From IMG/VR virus record IMGVR_UViG_3300044701_002789, positions 124,001 through 188,000 of that record: a stretch of 64,000 nucleotides of DNA. One strand, 5' to 3'. The translations under genes were made by a program, and so were the position numbers. The number at the start of each line of letters is the position of its first letter. The stretch's first letter is position 1. Shown piece by piece: positions 20,694-61,929 of this stretch. The notes under the pieces were generated by a model. That model did not search any database. It was given only the letters and a program-made list of their open reading frames with translations, and was not told where the DNA came from.

Positions 20694-20777
20694 CGGGGTT
20701 CTCCCTTTGGTTGACTTGTCCATTGTAGGGCATGGGGAGGCATCCTGTCGCCTCCCCTTGTGCAGGTTCACAAACCG

Positions 20778-21026
20778 TCACAGCATGGAAACTAGGCGCA
20801 TGAGACTGGATACCTGCACCGGAGTCTGCCATGGCATAATTTCATCCAGCATGTTGCCGCTTGGGCGTATAATTGCCACCTCAAAAGTATCCTGCCCGAT
20901 TGTACCCTTAAGACCGGAACCTTCGGGTCCAGAAACTACAGAAACTCCCCAACCATTGTCAAAGGTACGCTGAGCGATTGTAGCACCTTTGAGACTATGA
21001 TCGCGGAAGGTGAGAGTGGAGAACAT
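20778..21026 (-). CDS. Hypothetical protein
   Basis: Own promoter and GTTCACCAC leader. Confidence 0.75.
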   Translation of the reverse strand: MFSTLTFRDHSLKGATIAQRTFDNGWGVSVVSGPEGSGLKGTIGQDTFEVAIIRPSGNMLDEIMPWQTPVQVSSLMRLVSML

Positions 21027-21101
21027 GGTGCGGTTCGGGTGGTGAACTGAAAGAATTGTAGGGCATGGGAGGGGGGATCGGTGTCCCCCCTTGTGACAGT
21101 T

Positions 21102-21263
21102 TCAGCGTTGGAACTGTGCCATGCTGCTGGGGGCGATGTGGGCGGGCGATCCGCAGGAGCGATAAAATCCTACCATACGCTGCGCCTCCTGAACAGTGGG
21201 GAACCACTGGGAGCGCCACTGGCAGTCCCCGTAGGGGACTTGATAGCGAACCTCAATCCTCAT
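21102..21263 (-). CDS. Hypothetical protein (MRIEVRYQVPYG...)
   Basis: Own promoter TGCCCTACACT. Confidence 0.7.
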   Translation of the reverse strand: MRIEVRYQVPYGDCQWRSQWFPTVQEAQRMVGFYRSCGSPAHIAPSSMAQFQR

Positions 21264-21340
21264 CGGTGTCTGCATGGGTTGGTTGCGACTGGATACAGTG
21301 TAGGGCATGAGAGGGCAGGATCGCTGCCCCCAGTGGACAC

Positions 21341-21670
21341 CTAGGCGACTGTCACAAGGTCACGCCAGGCGCCATAAGTTTCTGACACATTCTCCAGAAA
21401 CTTAATCACTGCAGGATAAACCTCACAGCGCACCCAAGTATAAGAAACTGAAAGAAAGTTCCAAACTTTCTTGATAATCTGAAGGGTAGCATCTTTGCCA
21501 CCATTCTGATACCATTCTTGTGTTTTCTTGAAGATGACATAAACAATGGCGGCGATTGTGAGGCACACGGTTTCTACCGTGTCCATGTAGTTGTTGAAAT
21601 GTTTCTGATAGTTAATGCTCTTAAGATGAGCGATCAGAGCATCAGCGGGGGGGAAGGCGGGGGAGTTCAT
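21341..21670 (-). CDS. Hypothetical membrane protein
   Basis: Hydrophobic segment LTIAAIVYVIF; own promoter. Confidence 0.7.
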   Translation of the reverse strand: MNSPAFPPADALIAHLKSINYQKHFNNYMDTVETVCLTIAAIVYVIFKKTQEWYQNGGKDATLQIIKKVWNFLSVSYTWVRCEVYPAVIKFLENVSETYGAWRDLVTVA

Positions 21671-21804
21671 GATCTTAGGCGACGGGGGGGAATGTAGAGC
21701 GGTGCCCGTCGTTGAAACTACCATAACCGACAGGGAGGCATCCTGCCAAGGGGTCTTGTGCCACCGCTCAGACTGTCCACCTGATGCCACGCTGGGGTCT
21801 GATG

Positions 21805-21930
21805 GGGTGCTATGATTGTCTCACAAGCGAAGAAGAGCGGGGGCGCCGCGATGATACAAAACAAGACACTTACCCTGCTCGTAAATAATAGGATCTTAAG
21901 TATAAAAAAATGGAGGCATTTCTGCCCCCA
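21805..21930 (+). ncRNA. Repeated non-coding element, copy B
   Basis: -10 TATGAT, near-identical core to copy A. Confidence 0.55.
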
Positions 21931-21940
21931 TAAGTTATAA

Positions 21941-22261
21941 TCAGCGAAGAATCATTCCTGATACAAAATCCTCCACAATTCCATCATGTTTGATCTTCCA
22001 TTGAAAGTCTTTCTGATAGACTTTCTTATCACCGCAACCATTCTCAGAAAGAATAGCATTCAGGCGGGACTTTGTGGTGGTTGTCTGATGTCCGCCATCA
22101 TAAAGTTTCAGGAAACCTTCTCCAATCTCAGCGATCAGGTTTCCATAAAGAAACACTCGTGAGATCTCATTTCCTGCTTCATACTCTACACGAGTGTTTG
22201 CAGATTTCCAATCGTAACGATTGGAAATCGCTTTGTTCATTTTGCGTTCGATGACTCGCAT
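21941..22261 (-). CDS. Hypothetical protein
   Basis: Own promoter; TTTKSRLNA motif resembles a common phage family. Confidence 0.75.
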   Translation of the reverse strand: MRVIERKMNKAISNRYDWKSANTRVEYEAGNEISRVFLYGNLIAEIGEGFLKLYDGGHQTTTTKSRLNAILSENGCGDKKVYQKDFQWKIKHDGIVEDFVSGMILR

Positions 22262-22329
22262 GGGGTGAATCCCTCAGGAACAGATCTAAGATAGCAGGGG
22301 GAGGGGGGGTTTCGCAACCCCCCGGTGTG

Positions 22330-22635
22330 TCAGTTGTCGGATTGGTCGGATTGGTCGGATTGGTCGGATTGGTCAGACCGGACCAGGATAGCAGCGACCA
22401 GGCGGTCCCGCTTGCGGATCGCGGTGGGAACCATTTCCCACTTGTGACGCTTGCCATTGGCGCTACGGGTGGCGCTCAGGATGCCTGCATCCTCCATGTC
22501 CACCATCAGGGCATGGATGGTGCCCTTGTGACGCTTCGGGTCCAGTCCCAGATCCCGCACCAGTTCGGAGCAGGTCTTAGAACCGGTCTGAATCAGGTGG
22601 GAGCGGATGCTGGTGCGGATGATGCTGGAAAGCAT
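22330..22635 (-). CDS. Putative winged-helix DNA-binding protein
   Basis: TCSELVRDLGL...TIHALMVDMEDAGILSATR...HKWEM pattern fits wHTH. Confidence 0.55.
   Translation of the reverse strand: MLSSIIRTSIRSHLIQTGSKTCSELVRDLGLDPKRHKGTIHALMVDMEDAGILSATRSANGKRHKWEMVPTAIRKRDRLVAAILVRSDQSDQSDQSDQSDN
22333..22372 (+). repeat. 9-bp tandem repeat (GTCGGATTG) x about 4
   Basis: Directly visible; encodes SDQSDQSDQSD. Confidence 0.95.
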
Positions 22636-22743
22636 GGGGTGTTCGTGTGAACTGAAAGAATCATAGGGCATGGGATGCCACCAGGCAACCACTCCTGACC
22701 AGTTCCCAAACTGGCACACCAGACCCCACACCTGACCCCATCC

Positions 22744-22870: not shown

Positions 22871-22874
22871 TTAT

Positions 22875-23178: not shown

Positions 23179-23240
23179 GGTTCAGTGGTGAACTGAGAGG
23201 ATTCTAGGGCATGGGGACCGTTCCCGGTCCCCTTTGGTGG

Positions 23241-23429
23241 TCACTTTGCAAACAGTCTCCGAAACGCTCCAGCAATCTCCCAAGACTTTAGAATCTGAGG
23301 TTGACCATGAATCAAAACCATTTCCTGATGATTGTAAAGAACCCAGGAGATTTGATCCTTTGGATCTTTATCTTTGTCTTCCAACTTACAGCAAGTTGCG
23401 TAAGTTCTTACCAGTTGTGTGAGAGACAT
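23241..23429 (-). CDS. Hypothetical protein
   Basis: Own promoter and leader hairpin. Confidence 0.65.
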   Translation of the reverse strand: MSLTQLVRTYATCCKLEDKDKDPKDQISWVLYNHQEMVLIHGQPQILKSWEIAGAFRRLFAK

Positions 23430-24077: not shown

Positions 24078-24219
24078 GGTAGACTCTGGGATTGGGTTTG
24101 CTGGCGGTCGGGGTGTTTCCCTCCCGCCGATGCACATAGTATGCCACGGGGGAACCCACCCCAGCAACCAGGATTGTGCCACTGCCCAAACCGTCCTCAG
24201 GTGGCACAGCAGACCCCCA

Positions 24220-24350: not shown

Positions 24351-24354
24351 AGAA

Positions 24355-24513: not shown

Positions 24514-24585
24514 GGGAGTTCTGTGGTGAACTGAGAGAATTGTAGGGCATGGGGGTGATCCTGTCACCCCCTAGTGTGCCAGTGG

Positions 24586-25341
24586 TCAGACCGTCACAGT
24601 TTTCTTACTGTAACCTCCGAACTGTTTGTTAGAACGACGGGCACGGATTGCGGCGCCCCATTCTGAACCTTTCGGTTGCGTGCCATGCACAAGCAAAGCG
24701 AACGGTTTATCACCGAAGCAGTGTGAATCATCGTGGTCAACTTCCAGACCCAGACGTTCAGCGTCCGCATCATTCATGCAGACTTTGCTATAACGTGGGA
24801 AGTAACCTTCGTCGATCAGGTAATCAAACCGACCACCATACGATGCGGTCATGTAGAAGTTACTGGGCAACTTGAAGTTAAGAAACAACCGCAGACTCTT
24901 AGAGTAGCAGTAGAACTTAAGATCAGGATTGCGATGGGCAACCTCAATCCATGCGTCAAGATACGCACCAGAGAAGAAGTCTCCAGACTCATGAATGCGC
25001 ACCAATTCTGTTTTCTTAGTGCGATGATGTTGGATGCTGTCGTGGATAAGATCCGCAGCACTGACAGAGTAACCTGGGACAGTTCCGTTCTGCAGAGCAT
25101 CAACAATCAACTCCAGATTGCGGGCGCGATTGTTGAAGACAGCATCATACTGCACCTCAGAAGATGCAGCGAAACACCGAAACTCAGTGTGTTCGCCATC
25201 AACAATCCTACGCTTTCCGTCGTCACCAACGACAGCAAAAGACTTGCAAAACATTGCACCGGGGCATGTCTTACCTGCAGGCAGGTTGAAGATCAGCGTG
25301 TGAGTGCCAAGTTTGGCGTTGCCTTTGGAGAAGTTCAGCAT
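24586..25341 (-). CDS. Gene product 88 (GP88)-like protein
   Basis: SKGNAKL...FNLPAGKTCPGA...C...CFA...VRIHESGDFFS...FYCYSKS. Confidence 0.75.
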   Translation of the reverse strand: MLNFSKGNAKLGTHTLIFNLPAGKTCPGAMFCKSFAVVGDDGKRRIVDGEHTEFRCFAASSEVQYDAVFNNRARNLELIVDALQNGTVPGYSVSAADLIHDSIQHHRTKKTELVRIHESGDFFSGAYLDAWIEVAHRNPDLKFYCYSKSLRLFLNFKLPSNFYMTASYGGRFDYLIDEGYFPRYSKVCMNDADAERLGLEVDHDDSHCFGDKPFALLVHGTQPKGSEWGAAIRARRSNKQFGGYSKKTVTV

Positions 25342-25413
25342 CGGAGGAATCCCGTTGACTTGATCAGTATAAGGGGTGAGAGGGCACCCTTGCGAGTGCC
25401 CTTGTGCCAGTGG

Positions 25414-25698
25414 TCAGACCGTCCAGTTCAGCACTTGACCACGGTAGGCAATCCGACGCACACGGTTAGCGTCAAAGGAACGCCATGCACCGATTCCGTC
25501 ACGTTTCGCAACATCAAAGTCGCGAACACGGAAGATGTCAGGATTATTGCTAGGGCGACCAGTGCCCACAATCTCCTGGCGATCTTTAGGATTAAAACGA
25601 ATCTTCCGAAGCGTACCATCACGCTTCACAAACTCTACAGAAACAATGGTAGAACCTAGAGTAGAAAAGAGTTCGCGGATCTGTTCGGAGCGAGTCAT
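25414..25698 (-). CDS. WYL-like/SH3-fold small protein
   Basis: VSVEFVKRDGTLRKI...VRDFD...AWRSF. Confidence 0.5.
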   Translation of the reverse strand: MTRSEQIRELFSTLGSTIVSVEFVKRDGTLRKIRFNPKDRQEIVGTGRPSNNPDIFRVRDFDVAKRDGIGAWRSFDANRVRRIAYRGQVLNWTV

Positions 25699-25777
25699 GA
25701 GAGTTCAGTGGTGAACGATGTAAATGTAACAGGGCACCTGACCGGAATCAAGTGCCCTTGTGCCACCTGTCAAAGTG

Positions 25778-26035
25778 TCAGACTGTCGCTTCCTTCAGTT
25801 CACCGGAACGGCGAGCATTAAAGACAAGCGAACCAACGCTAGCACCCTGCGCAAGAGTGTCGTTAAGTTTAGTTACGAAACTGCCAGAAGTGCTGACATA
25901 GGTGTAACTTTTGTCGGGATTGGTCTGATAGGCAAGTTCTACCCGATCAGACTGACTGGTAGCACTAATGCTAGCAATCGCCTCAGATTCTTCAGTTGTA
26001 AATGTGCGGTTAATAACAATCATATTCATACTCAA
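25778..26035 (-). CDS. Hypothetical protein, loosely KTSC-like
   Basis: SEAIASI...VELAY...SYTY...ASVGSLV spacing. Confidence 0.5.
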   Translation of the reverse strand: MSMNMIVINRTFTTEESEAIASISATSQSDRVELAYQTNPDKSYTYVSTSGSFVTKLNDTLAQGASVGSLVFNARRSGELKEATV

Positions 26036-26193: not shown

Positions 26194-26306
26194 AATAAAA
26201 ACAAAGGGTTTTCTGATGTGTGCAGTTTATAGTCTTACTCAGGACTATCAAATCTTACAGCACATCAGGATCTTATGTCAAGTCTGATGTGCCAGTTTCT
26301 TATGTG

Positions 26307-26504
26307 TCACACCTTAAGATCCATGATCTCAAGAAACTGCATTCTGATAGGTTCACCATTGACAGTGAAGAAAACAGAACATCTGTCAATCTCAATGTCA
26401 CCATCAACAACACTAAGATCAACATAATGCCCACCATCATTATCAGAAATGTAAGGATTACCTTCAGTTTCATACCCAACATAGTAAAGGGTATCATTGA
26501 CCAC
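26307..26504 (-). CDS. Hypothetical protein
   Basis: Co-directional ORF. Confidence 0.6.
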   Translation of the reverse strand: MVNDTLYYVGYETEGNPYISDNDGGHYVDLSVVDGDIEIDRCSVFFTVNGEPIRMQFLEIMDLKV

Positions 26505-26550: not shown

Positions 26551-26739
26551 TCAGGATACTTCAGATTCGGTGGTCACAGTCTCATCAGTGGACGGTTTCA
26601 CAGGTGGCACACGGAGATTATAAGGACTGTTAAAAAACCTCCTAAAAGAAGTGACCAGAATAATACCCGTTGAAAGAACACCAATAAACCCAAGGATGGT
26701 AACAGCATTACCAGTGAAATCAAGAGTGTCAGGCATCAT
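26551..26739 (-). CDS. Small membrane protein
   Basis: One hydrophobic helix. Confidence 0.7.
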   Translation of the reverse strand: MMPDTLDFTGNAVTILGFIGVLSTGIILVTSFRRFFNSPYNLRVPPVKPSTDETVTTESEVS

Positions 26740-26879: not shown

Positions 26880-26984
26880 GTCGGTGATTTGCGGACGAAT
26901 CAAATATACCCCATCAGAACCCAACCACACAATACCCCTTGTGCCACTGAACAATCTGACCACTGATCACCCCATCAGACATCA

Positions 26985-27382: not shown

Positions 27383-27418
27383 GAGGTTCTGATGTGAACA
27401 GTAATAAGATAACAGAGA

Positions 27419-27805
27419 TCAGGATGCTTGTGGAGTCTTATGTGCCAGTTTGGAAACTGGTACAAGACCATAATCACGAATCATAACATCCCTCACTATT
27501 TCCCTATCGTAAGAATCACCACAGAAGTCAACATTCTCAGTCTTAAGATATTTTGCTGTTGCTTCCATGATCTGATCCATTGTTGCACCCATATCATAGA
27601 TGCCACTCTTACCATAGAAACTGAACACATAAGAATAGAAGAGATTCATTCTCTTAGTCTCTTCTGATTCCTTATGCTCATTCAGTTTCCTTTTGATGGA
27701 AATGGCAAGCTGTTCATTCTTACCATTGAACATAATACCCAGATTCTTATTGTCAAAGAGATCAATAAGACCAATCATCAGTTCAGACTCTTCAATGGAA
27801 AACAT
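27419..27805 (-). CDS. Hypothetical protein
   Basis: Promoter TTGACA-N17-TAGAAT upstream. Confidence 0.75.
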   Translation of the reverse strand: MFSIEESELMIGLIDLFDNKNLGIMFNGKNEQLAISIKRKLNEHKESEETKRMNLFYSYVFSFYGKSGIYDMGATMDQIMEATAKYLKTENVDFCGDSYDREIVRDVMIRDYGLVPVSKLAHKTPQAS

Positions 27806-28069
27806 AAGATTCCTTAAGTAATGGAGAAACGAATCCCTTCAAAGCGGACAAACCAATTCTACTGGGATTCTTATGAGGTGTCAAGTGATTGTTACGGAAT
27901 GTTAACAAACCATTTAATACCTCCGGTTGGTGTCTTTGGTTGTCTTAGACAGTATAAGGGTCTTCTAGGCGCTCCTGGGTGCCTCTCAGGACGCTTCTGA
28001 AACTGACCCACAGACATAAAAAAAACTCTGATTCCCGTAAGAACCAGAGTCTTATGATATGTTCACTGA

Positions 28070-30282: not shown

Positions 30283-30371
30283 GGGTGGTGCCTTGACTAC
30301 TTGTGTAGAATATCAGAGTCTGGGGTGCTGGTGGGGATCAGTGTGCCACTTTTGGTTGTGTCTACGTGATT

Positions 30372-33038: not shown

Positions 33039-33085
33039 AGTATAACACCTCCCAGGTGCTCCGGGAGGTGTGAGTGTGACGGTTT
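33039..33085 (-). promoter_or_regulatory. Dyad/hairpin early promoter (repeat copy 1)
   Basis: AAACCGTCACA-30 nt-TATACT; 9-bp inverted repeat. Confidence 0.8.
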
Positions 33086-33086
33086 C

Positions 33087-33389
33087 TCAAGTGTCGGTAG
33101 AGAAAGGTTCAATCTCATCATCATCCATTGGTTCTACATAATCCAAAATCACATTTTCAGGTCTTTTAAAGTCAAAAGATTTGATAATAGCATCAGGGAC
33201 TACATCCAACAACCAATCGCCAAATGCATCTTCACAAGAAATGTCTTGTTCTTCACGACCTTTGGGATTATAAAGAACAATAAATTGAACTTTGTATCCA
33301 CGAAGTCCTTTTTGGGAATTATCGTATTCCTCAATTTGTCTTTTCAAATTTTGAACTTCCTCATAAGAAAGTTTTGAAACGTCAATCAT
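33087..33389 (-). CDS. Hypothetical protein
   Basis: Flanked by two near-identical promoters. Confidence 0.75.
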   Translation of the reverse strand: MIDVSKLSYEEVQNLKRQIEEYDNSQKGLRGYKVQFIVLYNPKGREEQDISCEDAFGDWLLDVVPDAIIKSFDFKRPENVILDYVEPMDDDEIEPFSTDT

Positions 33390-33412: not shown

Positions 33413-33458
33413 ATCATAACACCTCCCGGAGCACCTGGGAGGTGTGAGTGTGACGGTT
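33413..33458 (-). promoter_or_regulatory. Dyad/hairpin early promoter (repeat copy 2, loop inverted)
   Basis: AACCGTCACA-30 nt-TATGAT. Confidence 0.8.
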
Positions 33459-33729
33459 AGTCATCTGTCCAGGGGGAAGGTCGTTGCATCAACCTTGCAA
33501 GATTTTCATTATATTTTGGAGTTTCATTTAGTCGTTCCACAAGTGCATCAAAGTCCTCAACCGAAAGAACAATTTTCTCCACCTCAAAGTTTTTACCCCA
33601 AAACCACTCCTGGTTCATTTTATACCATCCCTCATTGAGAGTATAAAAAAACTGATAATGAGAAAACCAAGTGTATGGGGAACTCATCAGTCCTTTCCAC
33701 CAGTATATGGAGTTTAGGAGGTTATTCAT
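33457..33729 (-). CDS. Hypothetical protein
   Basis: ATGA-coupled ORF. Confidence 0.7.
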   Translation of the reverse strand: MNNLLNSIYWWKGLMSSPYTWFSHYQFFYTLNEGWYKMNQEWFWGKNFEVEKIVLSVEDFDALVERLNETPKYNENLARLMQRPSPWTDD

Positions 33730-34043: not shown

Positions 34044-34276
34044 TGATTTGTTTGGGTTGTTGAGGGTATTATAGGACAAAGGACACCTGAAATCAAGTGT
34101 CCGTGTTCCAGTTCGTCAAGTGTCCTCCAATCAGATGCCTTGCGCTCAATTTCTTCAATGTTCATAGCAATGAACTTCTCGCGTTCGTCACGAATCCATT
34201 CATTCATTTCACTCAAAAGGTCATTGAGTTTGTTGTCAATTTCCTCGGAAGTCATGTAGTAATCTTCAGGGGGCAT
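34040..34276 (-). CDS. Hypothetical protein
   Basis: Own promoter; 3' end reads through next promoter. Confidence 0.6.
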   Translation of the reverse strand: MPPEDYYMTSEEIDNKLNDLLSEMNEWIRDEREKFIAMNIEEIERKASDWRTLDELEHGHLISGVLCPIIPSTTQTNQ

Positions 34277-34343
34277 AGGAGTTCCTTGACGACTTGAATA
34301 GAATAACCGGGACAGTGGTGATTATGGGAGGTTGATGTGCCAG

Positions 34344-34889
34344 TTAGGGAAGTGCCATATGCGTTGAATAAGTGTTCAAAAGATACTTAACATAATCATC
34401 AGGTGCATCACCTAGATCCTTTCCATCTGGAACAACCTCAACATAATCGCCAAACTTAGCAAGTTTTAGTCCTGCCGGATCATTGTCACAAACTGCAACA
34501 ATTGGACGAGTCAGCATTTGTAACCAGTTTTTATAATCCTTCGGTGGATTATTTGTCATTGCTGCAATTGCAGACTCGCCAATGTATGTCATTCTGGCGG
34601 CGTCAAAAATTCCTTCAGTCAAATAAATCACTCCATCTGATTGATAAAGACTTTCAACGCCCCAGACTACAACTGTTGGTGTATGTTTATTCCGGTAGGT
34701 ATAATACTTACCTTCCAACTTGGAATTAAAAATTTGTTTATTTCCAGTTGGATTGTATTGTTGATAACCCACCAGTTGACCAGACAAATTCCAACAATAG
34801 AATGTTGCAATGTTGAGTTCTTCATCCAGAAATGGTTTATGAAGTTTTATGTCAAGGTGTCGCTCCTTCAAGTGTTGTTCAATTGCCAT
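34344..34889 (-). CDS. Toprim-domain (primase-like) protein
   Basis: IYLTEGIFDA and VAVCDNDPAG Toprim motifs. Confidence 0.85.
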   Translation of the reverse strand: MAIEQHLKERHLDIKLHKPFLDEELNIATFYCWNLSGQLVGYQQYNPTGNKQIFNSKLEGKYYTYRNKHTPTVVVWGVESLYQSDGVIYLTEGIFDAARMTYIGESAIAAMTNNPPKDYKNWLQMLTRPIVAVCDNDPAGLKLAKFGDYVEVVPDGKDLGDAPDDYVKYLLNTYSTHMALP

Positions 34890-35627: not shown

Positions 35628-35699
35628 GAGTTGCCTCGTTGATCTGTGATTATTGTAAGGGATCAGGTGCCAGGTGAAGAGGAAGAGTGTGCCAGTTTC

Positions 35700-35894
35700 T
35701 CAACCGTCATTCTTCAACAACCACTTGTTAGAGATTGCCTTAAAAGTAAAGTCACTATCCAGAGACTTGAATACAATACCTTCACGTTGACTTGCATTGA
35801 GTGATGGTCCTTCTGAATACTTTAGAAGATCGTCCATTGTTTTTATATTAAGTTTATCAAGAGAAGTTAGAACTGTAATGATAGGAACATGCAG
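35700..35894 (-). pseudogene. C-terminal remnant of a DRB0094/Rnl-type RNA ligase
   Basis: Hand translation LHVPII...MDDLLKYSEGPSLNASQREGIVFKSLDSDFTFKAISNKWLLK; no N-terminal KxDG motif. Confidence 0.65.
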
Positions 35895-35930
35895 ACCCCT
35901 GAAGGTCCCCCTGTGACAGTTTAGAAAGTG

Positions 35931-36158
35931 TCAATCAAAAGTCTTGACGACTTCTTGTTGAACAGGAGAATTTCCTTTGATTCTATTTTGAATCCACTCT
36001 TCAACTTCTTTAACATCTGCGTCTGAAGCATTCCAGGTATCTACAAAAGGATCATAGTTACAATCAATCCAGATACCAAGCACATTCATTTGGGCATAAT
36101 ACCATTCCCTACGACTTCCGTTAGGTGCTTGATCACGACGAACGATACGATACTTCAT
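35931..36158 (-). CDS. Hypothetical protein
   Basis: Own dyad promoter. Confidence 0.75.
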   Translation of the reverse strand: MKYRIVRRDQAPNGSRREWYYAQMNVLGIWIDCNYDPFVDTWNASDADVKEVEEWIQNRIKGNSPVQQEVVKTFD

Positions 36159-36240
36159 AGGTTCAATTTGTTTACTAACCTATCATAGAGCATTTGGGGA
36201 GACATGTAAAGTGGGGGTTGTGACAGTTTTGAAGGTGTCC

Positions 36241-36906
36241 TTATGCTATTCTTTCTCTTTTGGAAGTATCTATACCTTTTGCTCTCTGATACATTGTAAG
36301 TGCTCCTGCATTTGTAATGTAACCAGTTTCTAGACATTTCCATTTTTGGGAATTTGTTTTAATGGATCCGAGTTTACCTGCTTTTGATCCATATTTTTTG
36401 CCATTTTCTATTCTTTGTTCTTTAGTGAGACCGCATATTCCAATTTTTCTATCTTTACACATTTGTCCTACTTTTTCCCCCACCATTTTTCCTCCAATTT
36501 TACCACCTATTTTACCACCTTTTCTACCATTTTCACTTAATTGTTCTTTGGTCAAAGAATGAACTCCTATTTTAAGTTCTGCTGCCCTTTTTCCATGCTT
36601 CAATCCACTTCTTCTACAAACATCCAAAGAAAATTTTCCACCACATCTTTGGTTTAAGCACAAAGGATCATTTAGAAATGGTCTAATTAACCGTTCCTCA
36701 ACTTCCCTACATTCAATATACCCTTTATCACTATACTCAAAAAATTGAAGTATCTGTTTCTTTGGAGTATAGAATTTCCAACACCACTTATGAGTTGTGG
36801 GAGATCCCCAATATTCTTGATTATAATACTTTTCTTTCTTACTACCATAATAGTAATAAGGAACCTCTTCAAAGGTAATCTTGTATGTATAAATGCGTGG
36901 TTGCAT
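36241..36906 (-). CDS. Seg-like GIY-YIG endonuclease
   Basis: RIYTYKI...YYYGSK...YWGSP...REVE..LI...LN; late promoter TATAAATA at 36942-36935. Confidence 0.75.
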   Translation of the reverse strand: MQPRIYTYKITFEEVPYYYYGSKKEKYYNQEYWGSPTTHKWCWKFYTPKKQILQFFEYSDKGYIECREVEERLIRPFLNDPLCLNQRCGGKFSLDVCRRSGLKHGKRAAELKIGVHSLTKEQLSENGRKGGKIGGKIGGKMVGEKVGQMCKDRKIGICGLTKEQRIENGKKYGSKAGKLGSIKTNSQKWKCLETGYITNAGALTMYQRAKGIDTSKRERIA

Positions 36907-38424: not shown

Positions 38425-38494
38425 TCGTTTCTTTGTTGATTACTTCGTAAGTTTAACCGATAAAGGGGCACCTGTAAAGTACCCCTGTGACAGT

Positions 38495-39606: not shown

Positions 39607-39675
39607 AGGTGGAATTGACTACAGATCAATAATAAGGGATGAGAGGGTGGTTTGGAAAGGATGTGTGTCAGTATC

Positions 39676-45301: not shown

Positions 45302-45369
45302 GGTTTTGTTGTGTCTTTGGTTATTATACCAAGTTTAGTGGACTGTTGGGTGTAATGTGTGACAGTTTA

Positions 45370-45621
45370 TCAACTGTCCTCGTCTGGTGTAAACTTACCA
45401 TCCTTAATCCAACCTTTTCTTCCTCCGCTAGTTGCACGAATGCCACGACCACGAGTTCTTTCGTGATAAAGTTCATCACTTCTTTGTCGCATTTTCGCTA
45501 TTTTTTCCTTTTCGCGCTTTGCTATTTCTTTCTCCATTCTTGCCTGCTCTTTTGAACTGCTCAAATCTATAAAAGTTGCTCTTTCAAGAATATCCATAAA
45601 GTCCTTAAAAGTCTTTTGCAT
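45370..45621 (-). CDS. Hypothetical protein
   Basis: Co-directional ORF. Confidence 0.7.
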   Translation of the reverse strand: MQKTFKDFMDILERATFIDLSSSKEQARMEKEIAKREKEKIAKMRQRSDELYHERTRGRGIRATSGGRKGWIKDGKFTPDEDS

Positions 45622-46025: not shown

Positions 46026-46106
46026 TGCTATCCTCCAATGTTTTAATGAGAATAGCACTCCCAGAAAAATCTAGGAGTGCCTCTTGTGTCAGTTCCTCAA
46101 GTGTCC

Positions 46107-46361
46107 TCACAAGGACCTTGTGATAGCATCACTTAATCCTTCCCAAAAAGACTTACGAGGTGTCCAAAATTTACCTTCGGGTCCACAATAATCTTTAAAA
46201 TTATGAGACCGTTCATTCTCACAAAAAAGATATGCAGATTTAATTTCTACTTCACCTGTAACCAAATTTGTTTTAGAAGTAACAGGTCTGCGACAGTGAT
46301 GATAACCGTGTTCATAATAATGATAATTACAATCTTTACAGAGTTTTTCAGTATCAGTCAT
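46107..46361 (-). CDS. Cys-rich protein
   Basis: CKDC...C...C...C. Confidence 0.7.
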   Translation of the reverse strand: MTDTEKLCKDCNYHYYEHGYHHCRRPVTSKTNLVTGEVEIKSAYLFCENERSHNFKDYCGPEGKFWTPRKSFWEGLSDAITRSL

Positions 46362-47344: not shown

Positions 47345-47379
47345 TGGAGTTGTGTGTTGTATGAGAGTATTATAACCCA

Positions 47380-47625
47380 TCAAGACCCAGAGTGGGAAGG
47401 GTCTTGTGACGGTTCTTGAAGTGTCTCCAAATCATTTGAAAGAATACGAAGGTCCATAGAACTCACCACCATTCTCCCATAACCATCATCACCCATAAAC
47501 TCCTCATACTCGTCTATGATTTTAAGAATTGCAGTTGCGAGTGCTTCCCTCATATCATCTGTGGGTTCTTGTGTAAGTTCTCCACAAAATGCTTCCCATA
47601 CTACAGATGCTCTTGATTTAGTCAT
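47380..47625 (-). CDS. Hypothetical helical protein
   Basis: Coupled ORF. Confidence 0.65.
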   Translation of the reverse strand: MTKSRASVVWEAFCGELTQEPTDDMREALATAILKIIDEYEEFMGDDGYGRMVVSSMDLRILSNDLETLQEPSQDPSHSGS

Positions 47626-50424: not shown

Positions 50425-50447
50425 AATGTGGTTCTCCGTTAGTGTTA

Positions 50448-50708
50448 TTATCCTATCACATCCAGGTCTTTCCTGCGATGTCCTTGTGACGGTTCTACCT
50501 TTGTCTCCAACAGGTTCAAAAGTTCTCTACAAAGATTGATTTTCCCATAGTCAATTCCATCAGTAAAAATTCTGGTTGTTGGTTGAGGAATTCCATCATA
50601 AAACTCACCATACATTTCATAACAAGTTTTTTCACTTGCAATTTCTTTGAGTTTGTTAATAATAAGTTCTTGTTGTTCTTCAGTCATTTGCATTCCCAAA
50701 TCCATCAT
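50448..50708 (-). CDS. Hypothetical protein (paralog of 31252)
   Basis: Shared motif. Confidence 0.65.
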   Translation of the reverse strand: MMDLGMQMTEEQQELIINKLKEIASEKTCYEMYGEFYDGIPQPTTRIFTDGIDYGKINLCRELLNLLETKVEPSQGHRRKDLDVIG

Positions 50709-51404: not shown

Positions 51405-51484
51405 AAGGTTTTTTGCGTGTACGATACTACTATAACACAAAACCCCGAGTTACTCAAAGGGTCTTGTGACGGTTTCTTAAGTGT

Positions 51485-51721
51485 CTACTCCGGCACTCTA
51501 ATAAAATCCTTCACATTAGGAACAGAACCGCAAACTTTATTTGCATTTTCCTTTGCGACAATTCTACATGCAAGTATAGTTGTTAATGCTCTTTGGTAGT
51601 TCTCATAATTTCTTCGTGAATTTATGTGGTCAGAGACCTGAAAACCACCGGTTATGATACCAATGGTAACAAAAGAAAGAAAAATAAAAAATGTTTCGGG
51701 TTGATTAAAAAAATCCTTCAT
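51485..51721 (-). CDS. Small membrane protein (paralog of 56359)
   Basis: TM then YQ.AL.TI..CR...CG.VP. Confidence 0.7.
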   Translation of the reverse strand: MKDFFNQPETFFIFLSFVTIGIITGGFQVSDHINSRRNYENYQRALTTILACRIVAKENANKVCGSVPNVKDFIRVPE

Positions 51722-52784: not shown

Positions 52785-52854
52785 AAGTTCTCCATTGATA
52801 AAGTCATCATACCACAAAATTCACCACCCCACAAGAGGTAGTGTGACGGTTTCG

Positions 52855-53235
52855 TTAGTGGTCCAAGATAACCTCAAAGATTACCTTATGCTCATCATTT
52901 TTATAATAAGTATTGAAATTAAATTCTGTAGTCATATTCACAACTCTTGCCGTTCCAGTTTTTAACATTTCTGCAACCTGAAAATAACTATCGTTGCAAC
53001 TACTCACATCATAAGTTGTAACAGGTTTTGGTTTATAATTTATTGTTGAGTTTGTTGCGGTATAATAATTAGATGCAGTAATTCCAGTACCAGTATTTCC
53101 AGTAATACTTAAGGTTGATAGAGTATTAACATCCTTAAGTTTTTCTACAAATTCTGGGTCAAGTTCATGTTGAATTTTATTCTCAATCGGTGCAGGTTTT
53201 TTTAATTCTTCCCATTTTGCGATTAGTGGGTTCAT
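52855..53235 (-). CDS. Hypothetical protein
   Basis: Coupled ORF. Confidence 0.7.
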   Translation of the reverse strand: MNPLIAKWEELKKPAPIENKIQHELDPEFVEKLKDVNTLSTLSITGNTGTGITASNYYTATNSTINYKPKPVTTYDVSSCNDSYFQVAEMLKTGTARVVNMTTEFNFNTYYKNDEHKVIFEVILDH

Positions 53236-57916: not shown

Positions 57917-58000
57917 CGTGAGGTTTTTGTGTCTGTTTCCTTATGATACCACAAAATCCACCACCTCTCAAGAGGCAGTGTGCCAGTTAGTCAGGTGTCT

Positions 58001-58222
58001 TCAGTCATTTTTCTTTCCATGTCGTTCATTAAACTCTTTTTGTTTTTTGACTAACTCTTGTTTTCTAAATTCTAATACTGCTGCTTTAAATCCGATAGAA
58101 AAGTATGCAAAATCACTTGGTTTATTGCTATATTCTGTTTTTATTTCTTTCCAACTTTTCTCAATAATTATATCCATTTCTTCGTCCCAAATATAAGGGA
58201 ATACTGAATTATCACTTGTCAT
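58001..58222 (-). CDS. Hypothetical protein
   Basis: Co-directional ORF. Confidence 0.6.
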   Translation of the reverse strand: MTSDNSVFPYIWDEEMDIIIEKSWKEIKTEYSNKPSDFAYFSIGFKAAVLEFRKQELVKKQKEFNERHGKKND

Positions 58223-59592: not shown

Positions 59593-59846
59593 TCTTCCAC
59601 CTTTACATAAACAACATCATTATAATCATCATTACCCTCATCATCAGGACCTTCAAAATACCAATCACAAAATTTTGGATTTTTTCTATTGATAGAGGGA
59701 AAACGACTTTCCATTTCCCAAATCTTATCTTTGATTTGCTGATAAGTTCCTTCTAAAATATAGAGTTTATTTTTAGCAAAAGTTGAACTATCTTGCGGTC
59801 CAGCACCAGAAGCACCATCGTCTTTGTAAATAATGTAGAGTTTCAT
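59589..59846 (-). CDS. Hypothetical protein
   Basis: Coupled ORF. Confidence 0.7.
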   Translation of the reverse strand: MKLYIIYKDDGASGAGPQDSSTFAKNKLYILEGTYQQIKDKIWEMESRFPSINRKNPKFCDWYFEGPDDEGNDDYNDVVYVKVEE

Positions 59847-59855
59847 TTTAGTTCC

Positions 59856-60080
59856 TCAAATAATAAAAACATCTCTTTTAGGTCCAAGGTTCTTATGATA
59901 CTGAACAAATGCTTCTTTGAGTTCTTTACTATCATAGACACTCTCCCAACTTTCACACATCAAAACCTCCCAGTTCTCAAAGTGTTCGTCAGTCCTATAC
60001 CACAGAAACTCTGGGTCATCTACATCCTCATCCAGTTCCACATAATAAGTGATTTCTTTAGATACATTTTTGATTTTCAT
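59856..60080 (-). CDS. Hypothetical protein
   Basis: Coupled ORF. Confidence 0.7.
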   Translation of the reverse strand: MKIKNVSKEITYYVELDEDVDDPEFLWYRTDEHFENWEVLMCESWESVYDSKELKEAFVQYHKNLGPKRDVFII

Positions 60081-60373
60081 TCGTAAGCACTCCACTCACC
60101 GTTCAAGATTTCCCAGAAGTCCCATTCTTCACCTCTCATATGTCCTTTCCAGTTTCTAAAGTTATCTATACAATCCTTGAAACCCCATTTGATATTCCAT
60201 AGAACCCGTTGAAGTGCATTTTGGTTCTTGTAGTCAGTAAGTACCTTGTATGCATCCGGGTGCATTAGAATAGAAGTAAGTTGTTCATCAACTGACTGTT
60301 TAATATTTTTAATCAGTTCATCTTTTATGAGTTGTTCCAAGTCAATGTTTTTTAGTTCTTCTGGGTCAGTCAT
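60077..60373 (-). CDS. Hypothetical protein
   Basis: Coupled ORF. Confidence 0.7.
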   Translation of the reverse strand: MTDPEELKNIDLEQLIKDELIKNIKQSVDEQLTSILMHPDAYKVLTDYKNQNALQRVLWNIKWGFKDCIDNFRNWKGHMRGEEWDFWEILNGEWSAYE

Positions 60374-60652
60374 TCAATACCTCTCATAACAAACAAACTC
60401 ATTGGGTTTAGTTGAATGATACCACCACTTATGTTTTGGGTGGTGATTTCTATAACACCAAGTTTTTTCAATAATTACTTCCGGAATATCCATCATTGTA
60501 GATTCGTGAATAGCATTTACATACTTTCGCATTCTCTTTGCCGACTGAAACCATTTTGTTCCTCTTTTACCATCATACCAAAAAGAAACCTCATAGGACA
60601 ATCTCCTTTTGATTTTCCGTTTCATAATGCTTTGTAGTTCTTCTGGGTTCAT
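60374..60652 (-). CDS. Hypothetical protein
   Basis: Coupled ORF. Confidence 0.65.
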   Translation of the reverse strand: MNPEELQSIMKRKIKRRLSYEVSFWYDGKRGTKWFQSAKRMRKYVNAIHESTMMDIPEVIIEKTWCYRNHHPKHKWWYHSTKPNEFVCYERY

Positions 60653-60855
60653 TTACTAAGAACTCCAATAATTTGATTAAACATCCAAGAAATTAAGAGT
60701 GCTTGTCCCCAAGAAAGAGAGAAGAATGCAACCAACCCCCAGGCAATCAAACCAACAATAATCAAAAATCCAATAAACTCTCCAATGAGTTCAGGAGTAG
60801 ATTTGATAAATCCTGTTTCTTGTAGTGCTCTAATGTATTTGTCTTTTAAGTTCAT
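60649..60855 (-). CDS. Small membrane protein
   Basis: Hydrophobic C-terminal half. Confidence 0.7.
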   Translation of the reverse strand: MNLKDKYIRALQETGFIKSTPELIGEFIGFLIIVGLIAWGLVAFFSLSWGQALLISWMFNQIIGVLSK

Positions 60856-60860
60856 TTCAT

Positions 60861-61058
60861 TTATTCTCCAAGTTTTTCACGAAGTTTCAGGAATTCATAC
60901 CTCTCTTTGCATTGTTCTGGTTTTTCAACACAAAGAACTACTGTTTTGTCCCGACCATCATAACCTCCAATGTGCCTACCGAAATTATACCAGGCACCAG
61001 AAAGAAGAACAAGTATCAAAATGGAAGGAAAAATCATCCAAGTATCATCGTTCATCAT
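60861..61058 (-). CDS. Small membrane protein
   Basis: N-terminal TM. Confidence 0.7.
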   Translation of the reverse strand: MMNDDTWMIFPSILILVLLSGAWYNFGRHIGGYDGRDKTVVLCVEKPEQCKERYEFLKLREKLGE

Positions 61059-61414
61059 TCAATCTCCAACAATTCTCGTTGCTCTAAAGTAAGAGACGCA
61101 ATCAGTGCCTTTCGTTTTTCTTCTTTGAGTTCTTTTTGTTCTTTTTGTTTTAGTTTTTCATCCAGCATACTAATCCAGGAGAGAACATCCCATCCACCAT
61201 ATCCATCACTTACATTATCTTTACTAACGAACACTTTTTCATAAGACCATCCACCAATCTCGTCAGCATACCAAGTTACTACAAATTCAATAAAATAACA
61301 ATTACACTCTGGGTCTTCATAAACTTCGTAATTAAGTCCAAGTCGTCGTGCTTTCTCAAGCATCTCAAGAATTTGTGTTGCGGTGATAGTCATAGGGGTT
61401 TCTGTGTTTCTCAT
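61055..61414 (-). CDS. Hypothetical protein
   Basis: Own promoter 61416-61472. Confidence 0.7.
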   Translation of the reverse strand: MRNTETPMTITATQILEMLEKARRLGLNYEVYEDPECNCYFIEFVVTWYADEIGGWSYEKVFVSKDNVSDGYGGWDVLSWISMLDEKLKQKEQKELKEEKRKALIASLTLEQRELLEIE

Positions 61415-61464
61415 AGTATTATAACACCCCACAGGAACCTGTGAGGTGCGGAGTGGACGGTTTC

Positions 61465-61929
61465 TTAAGTGGTTGGACTATATCTTTTAGACCAATCATA
61501 AGTTGGGTCATATTTCCAATTCTCTTGATATTGTTGAATTAATCTTGCAGTTTCAGTGATGAGTTCTTGAGTAATATGAGAATACTCACATTCTACAGGA
61601 ACCCAAGCATTAAATTCTTCTCCGTGAGGCAACCACCCTCTCCAGAGATTTTTTTCAATAAACTTTACACATTTCTCTCCATTTTCATTAAATGGTTGTT
61701 GTGAAAGATAATGAATTGCATCGTGTTCATACCAGGCAGTCATTCCTTCATCAGTTGTGATTTTAGATGAGACATTTTTGAAAACATCTCGGTTTGGTTT
61801 ATTTGTAATGTGATGAATTGAAAAGAAATACAAATCACCGAACAAACTGTTCTTATAAGTATTCTCTTTTATTGATTGAACTGAAATCACTTCAATCTCT
61901 TGTGCATATGTCTCACACATTTCGTCCAT
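61465..61929 (-). CDS. Hypothetical protein with HDxxH motif
   Basis: EHDAIHYL...GE. Confidence 0.65.
   Translation of the reverse strand: MDEMCETYAQEIEVISVQSIKENTYKNSLFGDLYFFSIHHITNKPNRDVFKNVSSKITTDEGMTAWYEHDAIHYLSQQPFNENGEKCVKFIEKNLWRGWLPHGEEFNAWVPVECEYSHITQELITETARLIQQYQENWKYDPTYDWSKRYSPTT

What the first reader, a model, noticed from the sequence alone, without database searches (positions are those of the whole stretch)
20722..61472. Window-wide promoter cassette: dyad - 28 to 31 nt (usually a hairpin) - -10, with no canonical -35
Seen: more than 25 minus-strand promoters share the half-site AACYGKCACA 28-31 nt upstream of a -10 hexamer, usually preceded by an inverted half-site (for example GACAGTT-GATA-AACTGTC at about 45360 and GTGTGCCAGT-TGAGAT-ACTGACACAC at about 39670). 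Examples: 21100, 22330, 24580, 25400, 30350, 33080, 33455, 34110, 34345, 35695, 35920, 36225, 38495, 42245, 46095, 47412, 50492, 51470, 52850, 57985, 61460. Copies at 52807-52850 and 57942-57990 are near-identical. Established: T4-type phages carry mobile promoter/stem-loop cassettes (PeSLs), and transcriptome work on cyanophage Syn9 reported a non-T4 early regulatory element. Inference: a dimeric activator binds about 55 nt upstream of the TSS, and the repeats also serve as recombination joints for gene cassettes.
Basis: partly seen in the sequence, partly recalled or inferred. Interest (0 to 1): 0.65.

Follow-up and report, generated by a model that had tools for sequence, protein, structure and literature searches.

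The report
Cyanophage early-promoter cassettes with upstream dyad
The window comes from a T4-like cyanophage whose block of small early-type genes is punctuated by about 35 copies of one promoter design: a 20-24 bp palindrome, a fixed gap that often holds a terminator hairpin, then a -10 box. I found the same design in Syn9, P-TIM40 and other cyanomyoviruses, so it is real but almost certainly the early-gene element already reported for that phage family.

Summary
**Observation: confirmed.**
- The window is bases 124001-188000 of a complete 258-kb T4-like cyanophage (Kyanoviridae-type).
I count 37 minus-strand cassettes in the window and 54 in the genome.
- Consensus is GACAsTT-N4-AACyGkCACA. 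The dyad centre lies 41-43 nt before a TAnnnT -10 box, and the ATG follows 21-26 nt after it.
- Markov controls give about 1 such composite per genome.

**Spacer and core promoter.**
- The spacer holds a strong hairpin in 35 of 54 cassettes, against 5% of random 34-mers.
- A good -35 is present in only 17%. An extended -10 (TGn) occurs in 44%, against 8% of controls.

**DNA site, not RNA stem.** Mirrored dyad positions show no covariation.

**Distribution of the same dyad and spacing.**
- Present in B23 (64), P-SSM2 (30), S-PM2 (27), P-TIM40 (21) and Syn9 (13).
- Absent from T4 (0) and P-SSP7, and not enriched in candidate host genomes.

**Interpretation.** This is most likely the published cyanomyovirus early-promoter element, here fused with the upstream gene's terminator in a PeSL-like way. 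A dimeric factor bound near -54 is the best mechanistic reading, but it is untested and the factor is unknown. The recombination-joint idea has only circumstantial support. New member of a known kind.

The parts
19443..19501 (-). cassette 1: dyad centre 19489.5, -10 TAGACT, spacer hairpin -15.6; may drive copy E of the small repeated unit
20722..20782 (-). cassette 2: dyad centre 20770.5, -10 TACAAT, hairpin -19.1, ATG 20693
21055..21115 (-). cassette 3: dyad centre 21103.5, -10 TACAAT, hairpin -15.9, ATG 21026
21297..21356 (-). cassette 4: dyad centre 21344.5, -10 TACACT, hairpin -14.0
21720..21780 (-). cassette 5: dyad centre 21768.5, -10 TATGGT; the same dyad also has a plus-strand -10 (TATGAT, 42 nt) before small unit A
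22288..22349 (-). cassette 6: dyad centre 22337.5, -10 TATCTT, hairpin -16.6, ATG 22261 (Kyano_Gp96 family protein)
22660..22718 (-). cassette 7: dyad centre 22706.5, -10 TATGAT; plus-strand -10 TATACT at 43 nt before small unit B
23201..23260 (-). cassette 8: dyad centre 23248.5, -10 TAGAAT, hairpin -18.6
24136..24198 (-). cassette 9: dyad centre 24186.5, -10 TACTAT at 45 nt; plus-strand -10 TATACT at 41 nt before small unit C
24539..24598 (-). cassette 10: dyad centre 24586.5, -10 TACAAT, hairpin -15.8
25366..25426 (-). cassette 11: dyad centre 25414.5, -10 TATACT, hairpin -16.9, ATG 25341 (GP88-family protein)
25723..25782 (-). cassette 12: dyad centre 25770.5, -10 TACATT with TGn, hairpin -20.2
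26252..26311 (-). cassette 13: dyad centre 26299.5, -10 TAAGAT, TTGACA -35 at 18 nt
26553..26611 (-). cassette 14: dyad centre 26599.5, -10 TATCCT, no hairpin
26903..26963 (-). cassette 15: dyad centre 26951.5, -10 TATATT
27406..27464 (-). cassette 16: dyad centre 27452.5, -10 TATCTT with TGn, no hairpin
27951..28010 (-). cassette 17: dyad centre 27998.5, -10 TATACT; downstream gene unclear
30307..30365 (-). cassette 18: dyad centre 30353.5, -10 TATTCT with TGn
33039..33098 (-). cassette 19: dyad centre 33086.5, -10 TATACT with TGn, hairpin -20.0
33413..33472 (-). cassette 20: dyad centre 33460.5, -10 TATGAT with TGn, hairpin -18.6; the inner hairpin is the reverse complement of that in cassette 19
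34068..34127 (-). cassette 21: dyad centre 34115.5, -10 TATAAT, hairpin plus T tract also scored as terminator-like
34300..34359 (-). cassette 22: dyad centre 34347.5, -10 TATTCT, no hairpin
35652..35711 (-). cassette 23: dyad centre 35699.5, -10 TACAAT, no hairpin, ATG 35627 (CCA-adding-enzyme-like). Dyad and -10 are kept in orthologous promoters of relatives
35878..35935 (-). cassette 24: dyad centre 35923.5, -10 TATCAT
36182..36242 (-). cassette 25: dyad centre 36230.5, -10 TATGAT, TTTACA -35-like
38450..38509 (-). cassette 26: dyad centre 38497.5, -10 TAAACT, hairpin -14.6
39629..39687 (-). cassette 27: dyad centre 39675.5 (near-perfect 24-nt palindrome), -10 TATTAT, ATG 39606 (ThiF/E1-like)
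42201..42258 (-). cassette 28: dyad centre 42246.5, -10 TATTCT with TGn, before the ThiS-like/JAB/ThiF cluster
45323..45381 (-). cassette 29: dyad centre 45369.5 (GACAGTT-GATA-AACTGTC), -10 TATAAT with TGn, no hairpin
46049..46108 (-). cassette 30: dyad centre 46096.5, -10 TATTCT, 12-bp hairpin scored as terminator-like
47369..47428 (-). cassette 31: dyad centre 47416.5, -10 TATAAT, hairpin -13.7
50447..50508 (-). cassette 32: dyad centre 50496.5 (weak left half), -10 GATAAT at 44 nt
51429..51488 (-). cassette 33: dyad centre 51476.5, -10 TATAGT with TGn, terminator-like hairpin, ATG 51404 (RNA-ligase-like)
52806..52865 (-). cassette 34: dyad centre 52853.5, -10 TATGAT with TGn, terminator-like hairpin. 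Its core is 46/48 identical to a copy at genome 189.2 kb
57943..58002 (-). cassette 35: dyad centre 57990.5, -10 TATCAT with TGn; core 33/37 identical to cassette 34
59895..59957 (-). cassette 36, doubtful: weak dyad at 59945.5, -10 at 45 nt, AT-rich spacer
61418..61476 (-). cassette 37: dyad centre 61464.5, -10 TATAAT with TGn, hairpin -17.9

Best explanation
These are the early-class promoters of a T4-like cyanophage (Kyanoviridae type).

**Anatomy of a unit.**
- An 18-24 bp dyad-symmetric operator with consensus GACAsTT-N4-AACyGkCACA. The promoter-proximal half is the better conserved and is extended by ACA.
- A rigid gap, so that the dyad centre lies 41-43 nt before a -10 hexamer. That puts the centre at about -54 relative to the inferred start.
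- A -10 box that carries an extended TGn in about 44% of cases and mostly lacks a usable -35.
- A short leader of about 15-19 nt before the ATG.

**Proposed mechanism (inferred).**
- Host sigma-70-type RNA polymerase reads the -10 or extended -10.
- A dimeric sequence-specific protein bound on one face of the helix at the dyad recruits or stabilises the polymerase, as a class-I-type activator would.
- The factor must be present at injection, so it is either a host protein or a protein delivered with the virion.

**Role of the hairpin.**
- In about two thirds of units the spacer also encodes a GC hairpin, often followed by a T tract.
- This acts in RNA as the terminator or 3' stabiliser of the upstream gene. 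The upstream stop codon often lies inside the dyad.
- Each small gene is therefore a compact, self-contained terminator-plus-promoter module.

**Shown:** anatomy, non-randomness, fixed spacing, cross-phage and orthologous conservation, absence of RNA-type covariation.
**Inferred:** start site, early timing, activation rather than repression, and the identity of the binder.
For: **The phage.** Kyanoviridae-type identity: gp6 best hits are cyanomyoviruses, with Pfam hits to Gp6 and Kyano_Gp96 and a phage psbA.

**Abundance and spacing.**
- 54 cassettes, with dyad-to-(-10) spacing of 41-43 nt in 45 of them. The ATG lies 21-26 nt after the -10, and upstream stop codons fall within the dyad.
- The dyad pattern occurs 17 times against 0 expected and only with an N4 spacer. 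The composite occurs 64 times against 0.7.

**Core promoter.** TGn before the -10 in 24 of 54, against 8% of controls. A -35 with at least 5 of 6 matches in 17%. A generic sigma-70 scan picks up only a few of the cassettes.

**DNA site rather than RNA stem.** The Watson-Crick fraction at mirrored positions equals the expectation from independent columns at every position.

**Hairpins.** Present in 35 of 54, against 5% of controls. Four of the best terminator-like sites in a 20-kb scan lie inside cassettes.

**Conservation.**
- Same dyad, spacing and -10 in B23, P-SSM2, S-PM2, P-TIM40 and Syn9; T4 has 0.
- In Syn9 the sites precede small genes gp61-gp90, just upstream of the baseplate wedge gene. 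That is the same layout as this window.
- In relatives, the orthologous promoter of the CCA-enzyme-like gene keeps the dyad and the -10 while the spacer hairpin comes and goes.
Against: - No transcription start, timing or expression data exist for this genome (no RNA run was listed).
- The paper that defined the Syn9 early element is not in the library. Identity with the published logo therefore rests on my own scan of Syn9 and P-TIM40 and on my recollection of the abstract.
- No binding protein is identified.
- Five candidate host genomes show no enrichment of the dyad. Their only exact match lies inside a gene.
- The T7-like cyanophage P-SSP7 has none and Syn5 has one doubtful site. A general host regulator is therefore not supported.
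- P-TIM68, a fairly close relative by gp6, has only about 3-6 sites.
- A minority of cassettes carry a good -35 and might not need any factor.
Confidence: 0.7

Rival explanations
1. The dyad is an operator for a repressor or shut-off factor, for example an early gene product that switches off the early class at the early-to-middle transition. Promoter strength would come from the -10/extended -10 alone.
For: - Host promoters of marine picocyanobacteria often work with a -10 only (background knowledge).
- 44% of cassettes have TGn, and 17-44% have a partial -35.
- Early transcription in this phage family is transient (abstract of Doron 2016, recalled from memory).
- The dyad is not enriched in candidate host genomes, which fits a phage-encoded binder.
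Against: - A site centred near -54 does not overlap the core promoter.
- A spacing kept within about 1 bp across six distant phages suggests a stereospecific contact with RNA polymerase. That is more typical of activators.
- No helix-turn-helix protein was found among the 40 window proteins scanned.
Confidence: 0.17
2. The palindrome acts in RNA, as a stem-loop at the 3' end of the upstream transcript (terminator, processing site or stabiliser), and is tied to the -10 box only by tight gene packing.
For: - The dyad can form an 8-bp stem with a 4-nt loop.
- It overlaps the upstream stop codon.
- It is followed by a second hairpin.
Against: - Mirrored positions do not covary. The commonest site type keeps two internal mismatches, and each half is conserved in sequence.
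- The promoter-proximal half is longer and better conserved.
- The distance to the -10 is fixed whether or not a hairpin is present.
- The psbA-type sites combine the dyad with a full -35/-10 promoter.
Confidence: 0.04
3. The cassettes are primarily mobile or recombinogenic modules, analogous to PeSLs. Their conservation would reflect copying and gene conversion rather than selection on a protein-binding site.
For: - Cores 90-96% identical are shared by cassettes with unrelated flanking genes.
- The early region is extensively reshuffled among relatives that all carry the cassettes at about 0.5 per kb.
- PeSLs are documented recombination points in other T4-type phages (PMC2839356, PMC4122927).
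Against: - Most spacers and leaders are not similar to each other. Only the dyad and the -10 are conserved.
- The same consensus persists in phages whose genomes are otherwise only about 50-60% identical at the protein level. That needs functional selection.
- The two roles are not exclusive.
Confidence: 0.08
4. Chance or compositional artefact.
For: None.
Against: Observed against expected is 17 to 0, 64 to 0.7 and 91 to 0.25. There is also a strong strand bias that matches gene orientation.
Confidence: 0.01

Closest known systems
Early-gene regulatory element of T4-like cyanophages (Syn9 and P-TIM40; Doron et al. 2016, ISME J 10:1437, PMC5029184, not held here)
   Same: - Same phage family.
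- Same genomic setting: a block of small genes next to the baseplate genes.
- My scans find the same dyad, the same 40-44 nt distance to a -10 box and the same lack of a -35 in Syn9 (13 sites) and P-TIM40 (21 sites).
   Different: - I could not read the paper, so I cannot say whether its logo covers the full palindrome or the spacing.
- This genome and B23 carry far more copies (64 composite hits each).
- This genome embeds a hairpin in 65% of spacers, against about 20% in Syn9 and P-TIM40.
PeSLs (promoter-early stem-loops) of T4-type phages (Arbiol 2010, PMC2839356; Comeau 2014, PMC4122927)
   Same: - Small composite terminator-plus-early-promoter units.
- They sit between small genes of hyperplastic regions.
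- Some copies are near-identical although their flanks are unrelated.
   Different: - PeSL promoters are sigma-70 type with -35, N17 and -10. Here the -35 is mostly missing, an upstream dyad is added and the stem-loop sits inside the promoter.
- The recombination role is not demonstrated here.
- PeSLs at high density were reported as not evident in S-PM2 (PMC4503421). My scan nevertheless finds 27 dyad promoters there, 12 of them with hairpins.
Activator-dependent promoters with an upstream dimer site (class I CRP-type; cyanobacterial NtcA-type promoters lacking a -35)
   Same: A palindromic site at a fixed helical phase upstream of a -10-only promoter.
   Different: - From background knowledge, the sequence matches neither the CRP site (TGTGA-N6-TCACA) nor the NtcA site (GTA-N8-TAC).
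- The centre near -54 is neither the classic -41.5 nor -61.5.
- No binder is known.
T4 early promoters (UP-element assisted) and MotA-dependent middle promoters
   Same: Phage promoters that add an extra upstream element to a host-type -10 box.
   Different: - T4 itself has no copy of the composite.
- Cyanomyoviruses lack motA and asiA (PMC2984593).
- The MotA box sits at -30, not -54 (background knowledge).

Membership tests
Cyanomyovirus early-promoter element (Doron 2016) | Occurs in a T4-like cyanophage genome, upstream of small genes of the early-type region | tested here: met
   gp6 best hits are cyanomyoviruses. Kyano_Gp96 and Gp6 Pfam hits. Sites precede small ORFs next to the baseplate genes, as in Syn9 gp61-gp90.
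Cyanomyovirus early-promoter element (Doron 2016) | Same motif present in the reference phages Syn9 and P-TIM40 | tested here: met
   Weight-matrix hit plus -10 at 40-44 nt: Syn9 13 and P-TIM40 21, against 0.7-1.7 in Markov controls. The consensus is alike.
Cyanomyovirus early-promoter element (Doron 2016) | Agreement with the published logo and its position relative to mapped start sites | not testable with these tools
   The paper is not held. No citing paper in the library reproduces the motif.
Cyanomyovirus early-promoter element (Doron 2016) | Drives transcription early in infection | not testable with these tools
   No RNA run was listed for this genome.
PeSL (promoter-early stem-loop) | Stem-loop terminator joined to an early promoter in one short unit | tested here: met
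   Hairpin of -8 kcal/mol or lower in 35 of 54 spacers, against 5% of random sequence. Four of the top terminator-like sites lie in cassettes. About a third of cassettes have no hairpin.
PeSL (promoter-early stem-loop) | Sigma-70 promoter with -35, N17 and -10 | tested here: not met
   Only 17% have at least 5 of 6 matches to TTGACA at 16-18 nt. The stem-loop occupies the -35 position.
PeSL (promoter-early stem-loop) | Marks insertion, deletion or replacement junctions between closely related genomes | tested here: inconclusive
   The available relatives are either identical over 20.7 kb or only about 75% identical in protein and reshuffled.
Activator-dependent (class I-like) promoter | Dimer site at a fixed distance and helical phase upstream of a promoter with a weak or absent -35 | tested here: met
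   Spacing of 41-43 nt in 45 of 54, and 40-42 nt in five other phages. No covariation, so a DNA site.
Activator-dependent (class I-like) promoter | A protein binds the site and raises transcription | not testable with these tools
   Needs binding and transcription assays.

The most novel reading that the evidence does not exclude
The dyad is the operator of a still-unidentified master switch of early transcription, common to most Kyanoviridae. The switch is a dimeric protein delivered with the virion or borrowed from the host, acting from about -54 on -10-only promoters. The same units, with the upstream gene's terminator built into the promoter spacer, are the cyanophage counterpart of PeSLs and drive the modular shuffling of the early region.
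Probability: 0.35. Interest if true: 0.6.

Novelty: new member of a known kind. Interest (0 to 1): 0.38.

Why it matters
**The open question.** T4-like cyanophages are among the most abundant viruses in the sea, and how they launch early transcription without T4's Alt, MotA or AsiA tools is unresolved.

**What this genome and B23 contribute.**
- They give the largest sets of the element, about 50-60 sites each.
- From them come a sharp consensus, the strict N4 core, the one-turn half-site geometry and the fixed 41-43 nt distance to the -10 box.
- There is also clean evidence that the palindrome works as DNA rather than as RNA.

**What that makes possible.**
- It is a ready specification for a DNA pull-down probe and for reporter mutants.
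- It gives a simple annotation rule for early genes in uncultured cyanomyovirus genomes.

**The terminator-inside-promoter layout.** It shows how tightly these phages pack autonomous one-gene modules. It also suggests that earlier searches for sigma-70-type PeSLs missed the equivalent cassettes in cyanophages.

Tried and rejected
**Searches that gave nothing**
- Near-identity search of the phage collection with 8 kb of the window: no match.
- RNA evidence: none was listed for a 6-kb stretch with eight cassettes.
- Literature: Doron 2016 and Mann 2005 are not held. Papers citing them do not reproduce the motif.
- Rfam and tRNA scans of the window: nothing.

**Methods that were too blunt**
- The strict inner pattern CRSTT-N4-AASYG is not enriched in Syn9 (4 hits, control 4). 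This was misleading, because Syn9's inner positions are looser and the weight matrix does find the sites.
- Exact 5-mer dyad counting was too insensitive.

**Host-factor tests**
- The dyad has one exact hit in five Cyanobium/Synechococcus genomes, chosen by psbA similarity, and that hit lies inside a gene.
- With two mismatches the dyad is no commoner than the reversed control. A small host regulon cannot be excluded.
- T7-like cyanophages: P-SSP7 has none and Syn5 has one doubtful site.

**Other ideas tested**
- RNA-hairpin reading of the dyad: rejected for lack of covariation.
- General bidirectional use of the dyad: 11 plus-strand composites, with roughly 9 expected by chance by my own rough estimate. 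Not supported, except at three sites that precede a conserved small unit.
- Indel-junction test: the three near relatives are identical over 20.7 kb and the others are too distant.
- Search for a DNA-binding protein among 40 window proteins: none seen.

Full report
**What the window is.** The window is bases 124001-188000 of a 258,284-bp virus record with direct terminal repeats, rated complete. It has 36% G+C. It encodes a T4-type baseplate wedge protein gp6. The best tblastn matches of that protein are all cyanomyoviruses: Synechococcus phages B23 and B3 at 59%, then P-TIM68, Bellamy and S-SM2. It also encodes a Kyano_Gp96-family protein. The genome carries psbA, which is 95% identical in protein to Cyanobium/Synechococcaceae genomes. 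It is therefore an uncultured member of the T4-like cyanophages (Kyanoviridae type). Three IMG/VR contigs are identical to it over a 20.7-kb stretch.

**Checking the observation.**
- The exact 10-mer AACYGKCACA occurs 16 times on the minus strand and 3 times on the plus strand of the window. In the genome the counts are 23 against 3, with reversed-pattern controls of 2 and 1.
- Printing the sites showed a conserved GACAcTT seven to eleven bases upstream, a TAnnnT box about 30 nt downstream, and an ATG about 25 nt further.
- Iterating a weight matrix over both strands made it symmetrical, so the element is a true palindrome, with 63 centres in the genome.
- 54 centres have a minus-strand -10 box, 37 of them in the window.
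I add 14 more, mostly between 19.4 and 28 kb.
- Of the 37 window cassettes, 16 match the 10-mer exactly, 8 have one mismatch and 4 have two. The mirrored left half has at most one mismatch in 29.

**Is it more than chance?**
- The 18-nt pattern GNCRSTT-N4-AASYGNC occurs 17 times against 0 in Markov shuffles. It does not occur at all with an N3 or N5 spacer.
- Weight-matrix hits followed by TAnnnT at 40-44 nt number 64 against 0.7 expected.
- The strand bias follows gene orientation.

**Anatomy.**
- The oriented consensus is G-A-C-A-s-T-T, four free bases, then A-A-C-y-G-k-C-A-C-A. C at -7, G at +7 and C at +9 are invariant or nearly so. The promoter-proximal half is extended by ACA, while the distal half has no matching extension.
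- The dyad centre lies 41-43 nt before the first base of the -10 hexamer in 45 of 54 cassettes. If transcription starts 6-7 nt after the hexamer, the centre lies near -54 and the half-sites are about one helical turn apart.
- The ATG follows the -10 by 21-26 nt in most units.
- The stop codon of the upstream ORF frequently lies within the dyad, from -13 to +5 of the centre.
- TG precedes the -10 box at the extended -10 position in 24 of 54, against 8% of control TAnnnT sites.
- A -35 with at least 5 of 6 matches to TTGACA at 16-18 nt is present in 17%, against 2% of controls. At least 4 of 6 matches occur in 44%, against 16%.
- So 'no canonical -35' is true of most cassettes but not all. Sites outside the window, including the one before psbA, combine the dyad with a perfect TTGACA.
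- A generic sigma-70 scan of 20 kb recovers only a handful of the cassettes.

**The hairpin.**
- The 30-odd bases between dyad and -10 fold with -8 kcal/mol or lower in 35 of 54 cassettes, against 5% of random genomic 34-mers. Thirty have z below -2 against their own shuffles.
- About a third have no structure at all, yet keep the same spacing. The hairpin is therefore not part of the promoter geometry.
- Several hairpins are followed by T tracts. Four of the best terminator-like sites in an independent scan fall inside cassettes.
- In the orthologous promoter of the CCA-adding-enzyme-like gene, relatives have a GC hairpin plus T tract where this genome has none. The dyad and the -10 are kept in all of them.
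- The simplest reading is that the hairpin is the terminator or 3' stabiliser of the upstream gene, housed in the promoter's spacer.

**DNA site or RNA stem?**
- At every mirrored pair of dyad positions, the fraction of complementary pairs equals what independent columns predict.
- For example, the commonest combination at the fifth mirrored position is C opposite C.
- Each half is thus conserved as sequence, not as a pairing partner. This argues for a sequence-specific dimeric DNA-binding protein and against an RNA hairpin.

**Relatives.**
- Scanning whole genomes with the oriented matrix plus the -10 rule gave B23 64, P-SSM2 30, S-PM2 27, P-TIM40 21 and Syn9 13. Markov expectations were 0.7-2.0.
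- The modal spacing was 41 nt in all five relatives (42 nt here), within a 40-44 nt range throughout, and the consensus was the same.
- T4 has none, and P-TIM68 has only about 3-6.
- In Syn9 the sites lie at 44.8-53.0 kb, before small hypothetical genes gp61-gp90. These sit directly upstream of the baseplate wedge gene. That is the layout of this window read in reverse.
- Ten IMG/VR loci that share the CCA-enzyme-like gene at 70-78% identity carry the cassettes at 0.5 per kb on the gene strand.

**Relation to what is known.**
- As I recall its abstract, Doron et al. 2016 reported that a novel regulatory element controls early genes of Syn9. The abstract added that the same holds for P-TIM40 and that the elements are abundant and conserved among T4-like cyanophages.
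- The paper is not in the library, so I could not compare logos.
- Finding the same composite in exactly those two phages makes identity very likely.
- Earlier reviews assumed sigma-70-like early promoters in S-PM2 and Syn9 and noted the absence of motA and asiA.
- PeSLs of other T4-type phages are terminator stem-loops joined to sigma-70 early promoters, and they mark recombination junctions. The units here resemble them in being terminator-plus-promoter modules between small genes of a hyperplastic region. They fail the -35 criterion and place the stem-loop inside the promoter.
- A study of S-PM2 found few PeSLs. My scan finds 27 dyad promoters there, 12 of them with hairpins.

**Mechanism.**
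- The best-supported model has host RNA polymerase using the -10/extended -10 box. It would be helped by a dimeric factor bound one face of the helix upstream, at a fixed distance. The factor would have to be present at the moment of injection.
- I looked for the factor's origin. The dyad is not enriched in five picocyanobacterial genomes chosen by psbA similarity. Their only exact match lies inside a gene.
- The T7-like cyanophages P-SSP7 and Syn5, which also depend on host polymerase early, lack the element apart from one doubtful Syn5 site.
- This leans, weakly, towards a lineage-specific factor such as a virion-borne one, or towards lineage-specific use of a host protein with few chromosomal sites.
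- A repressor for early shut-off remains a live alternative.
- No DNA-binding domain was seen among the 40 window proteins scanned.

**Recombination joints.**
- Cassette-to-cassette similarity never extends into the flanking genes. A few cassettes share nearly identical cores: 46/48 between the 52.85-kb copy and one at genome 189.2 kb, and 33/37 with the 57.99-kb copy. Several share a -10/leader segment within the GC-rich block.
- Gene order around the shared genes is thoroughly reshuffled among the 75%-identical relatives.
- This is what a PeSL-like role would produce. It is also what one expects of any promoter that travels with its gene.
- The only near relatives are identical, so the junction test could not be done.

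**Verdict.** The promoter reading is well supported by anatomy and conservation. The activator and recombination readings are plausible inferences. The element is most probably the known cyanomyovirus early-promoter element, seen here in an uncultured phage with an unusually large and clean set of copies and a terminator built into the spacer.

Noticed in passing
window 18000-26000: An island of 48-64% G+C in a 35% G+C genome. It holds 12 of the dyad promoters. These have their own flavour: CATGCCC just before the -10 box and a shared leader containing TCAGTTCACCAC. An HNH endonuclease ORF (16952-17431) lies beside the island. It looks like a block acquired from a phage of a high-GC host that uses the same dyad.
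   Followed up: partly
window 20352-20466, 21822-21932, 22761-22872, 24239-24352 (+) and 19330-19437 (-): Five copies of a roughly 110-nt unit with a conserved core (…GGGGCGCC..GATGATACAAAA…ACTTACCCTG…AATAAT…). Three copies start about 7 nt after a plus-strand -10 box that shares the dyad of a minus-strand promoter, and end in a hairpin plus T run. The unit is either a small RNA or a roughly 30-codon ORF. There is no Rfam match, and the one predicted stem has weak covariation.
   Followed up: partly
window 38893-42131 (-): A ubiquitin-like conjugation gene set in the early region: a ThiS-like 88-aa protein, a JAB-domain protein, a 362-aa protein without a Pfam hit, and a ThiF/E1-like protein. 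Dyad promoters sit at 42246 and 39675.
   Followed up: no
window 34896-35627 and 50862-51404 (-): A CCA-adding/poly(A)-polymerase-family protein and an RNA-ligase-family protein, each behind a dyad promoter. They may be tRNA-repair functions expressed early.
   Followed up: no
window 36942 and 37021 (-): Two T4-type late-promoter motifs (TATAAATA) before the 221-aa ORF 36241-36906, which has no dyad. This is a late-class gene embedded among early-class units. Genome-wide the motif occurs 24 times on the minus strand and 3 times on the plus strand.
   Followed up: no
window 33039-33098 and 33413-33472: Two neighbouring cassettes share the outer stem of the spacer hairpin. The inner stem and loop are reverse complements of each other, as if the hairpin tip had been flipped.
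   Followed up: no
window 29548-29628 and 29704-29784: An 81-nt direct repeat, 90% identical, inside the 208-aa ORF 29425-30051.
   Followed up: no
genome 40460-41332 (outside the window; L030): The phage psbA is 95% identical in protein to Cyanobium/Synechococcaceae MAGs and close to Synechococcus WH 5701. This hints at a freshwater or estuarine picocyanobacterial host. Its promoter combines the dyad with a perfect TTGACA -35.
   Followed up: partly
L187 (Syn5) about 1530: The T7-like cyanophage Syn5 has one dyad-like site (score 13.4) in its early region, followed by TTGACC and a -10-like box at 41 nt. P-SSP7 has none.
   Followed up: no
window 699-12860 (-): A single 4053-aa ORF next to the baseplate genes, presumably a giant structural or fibre protein.
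   Followed up: no
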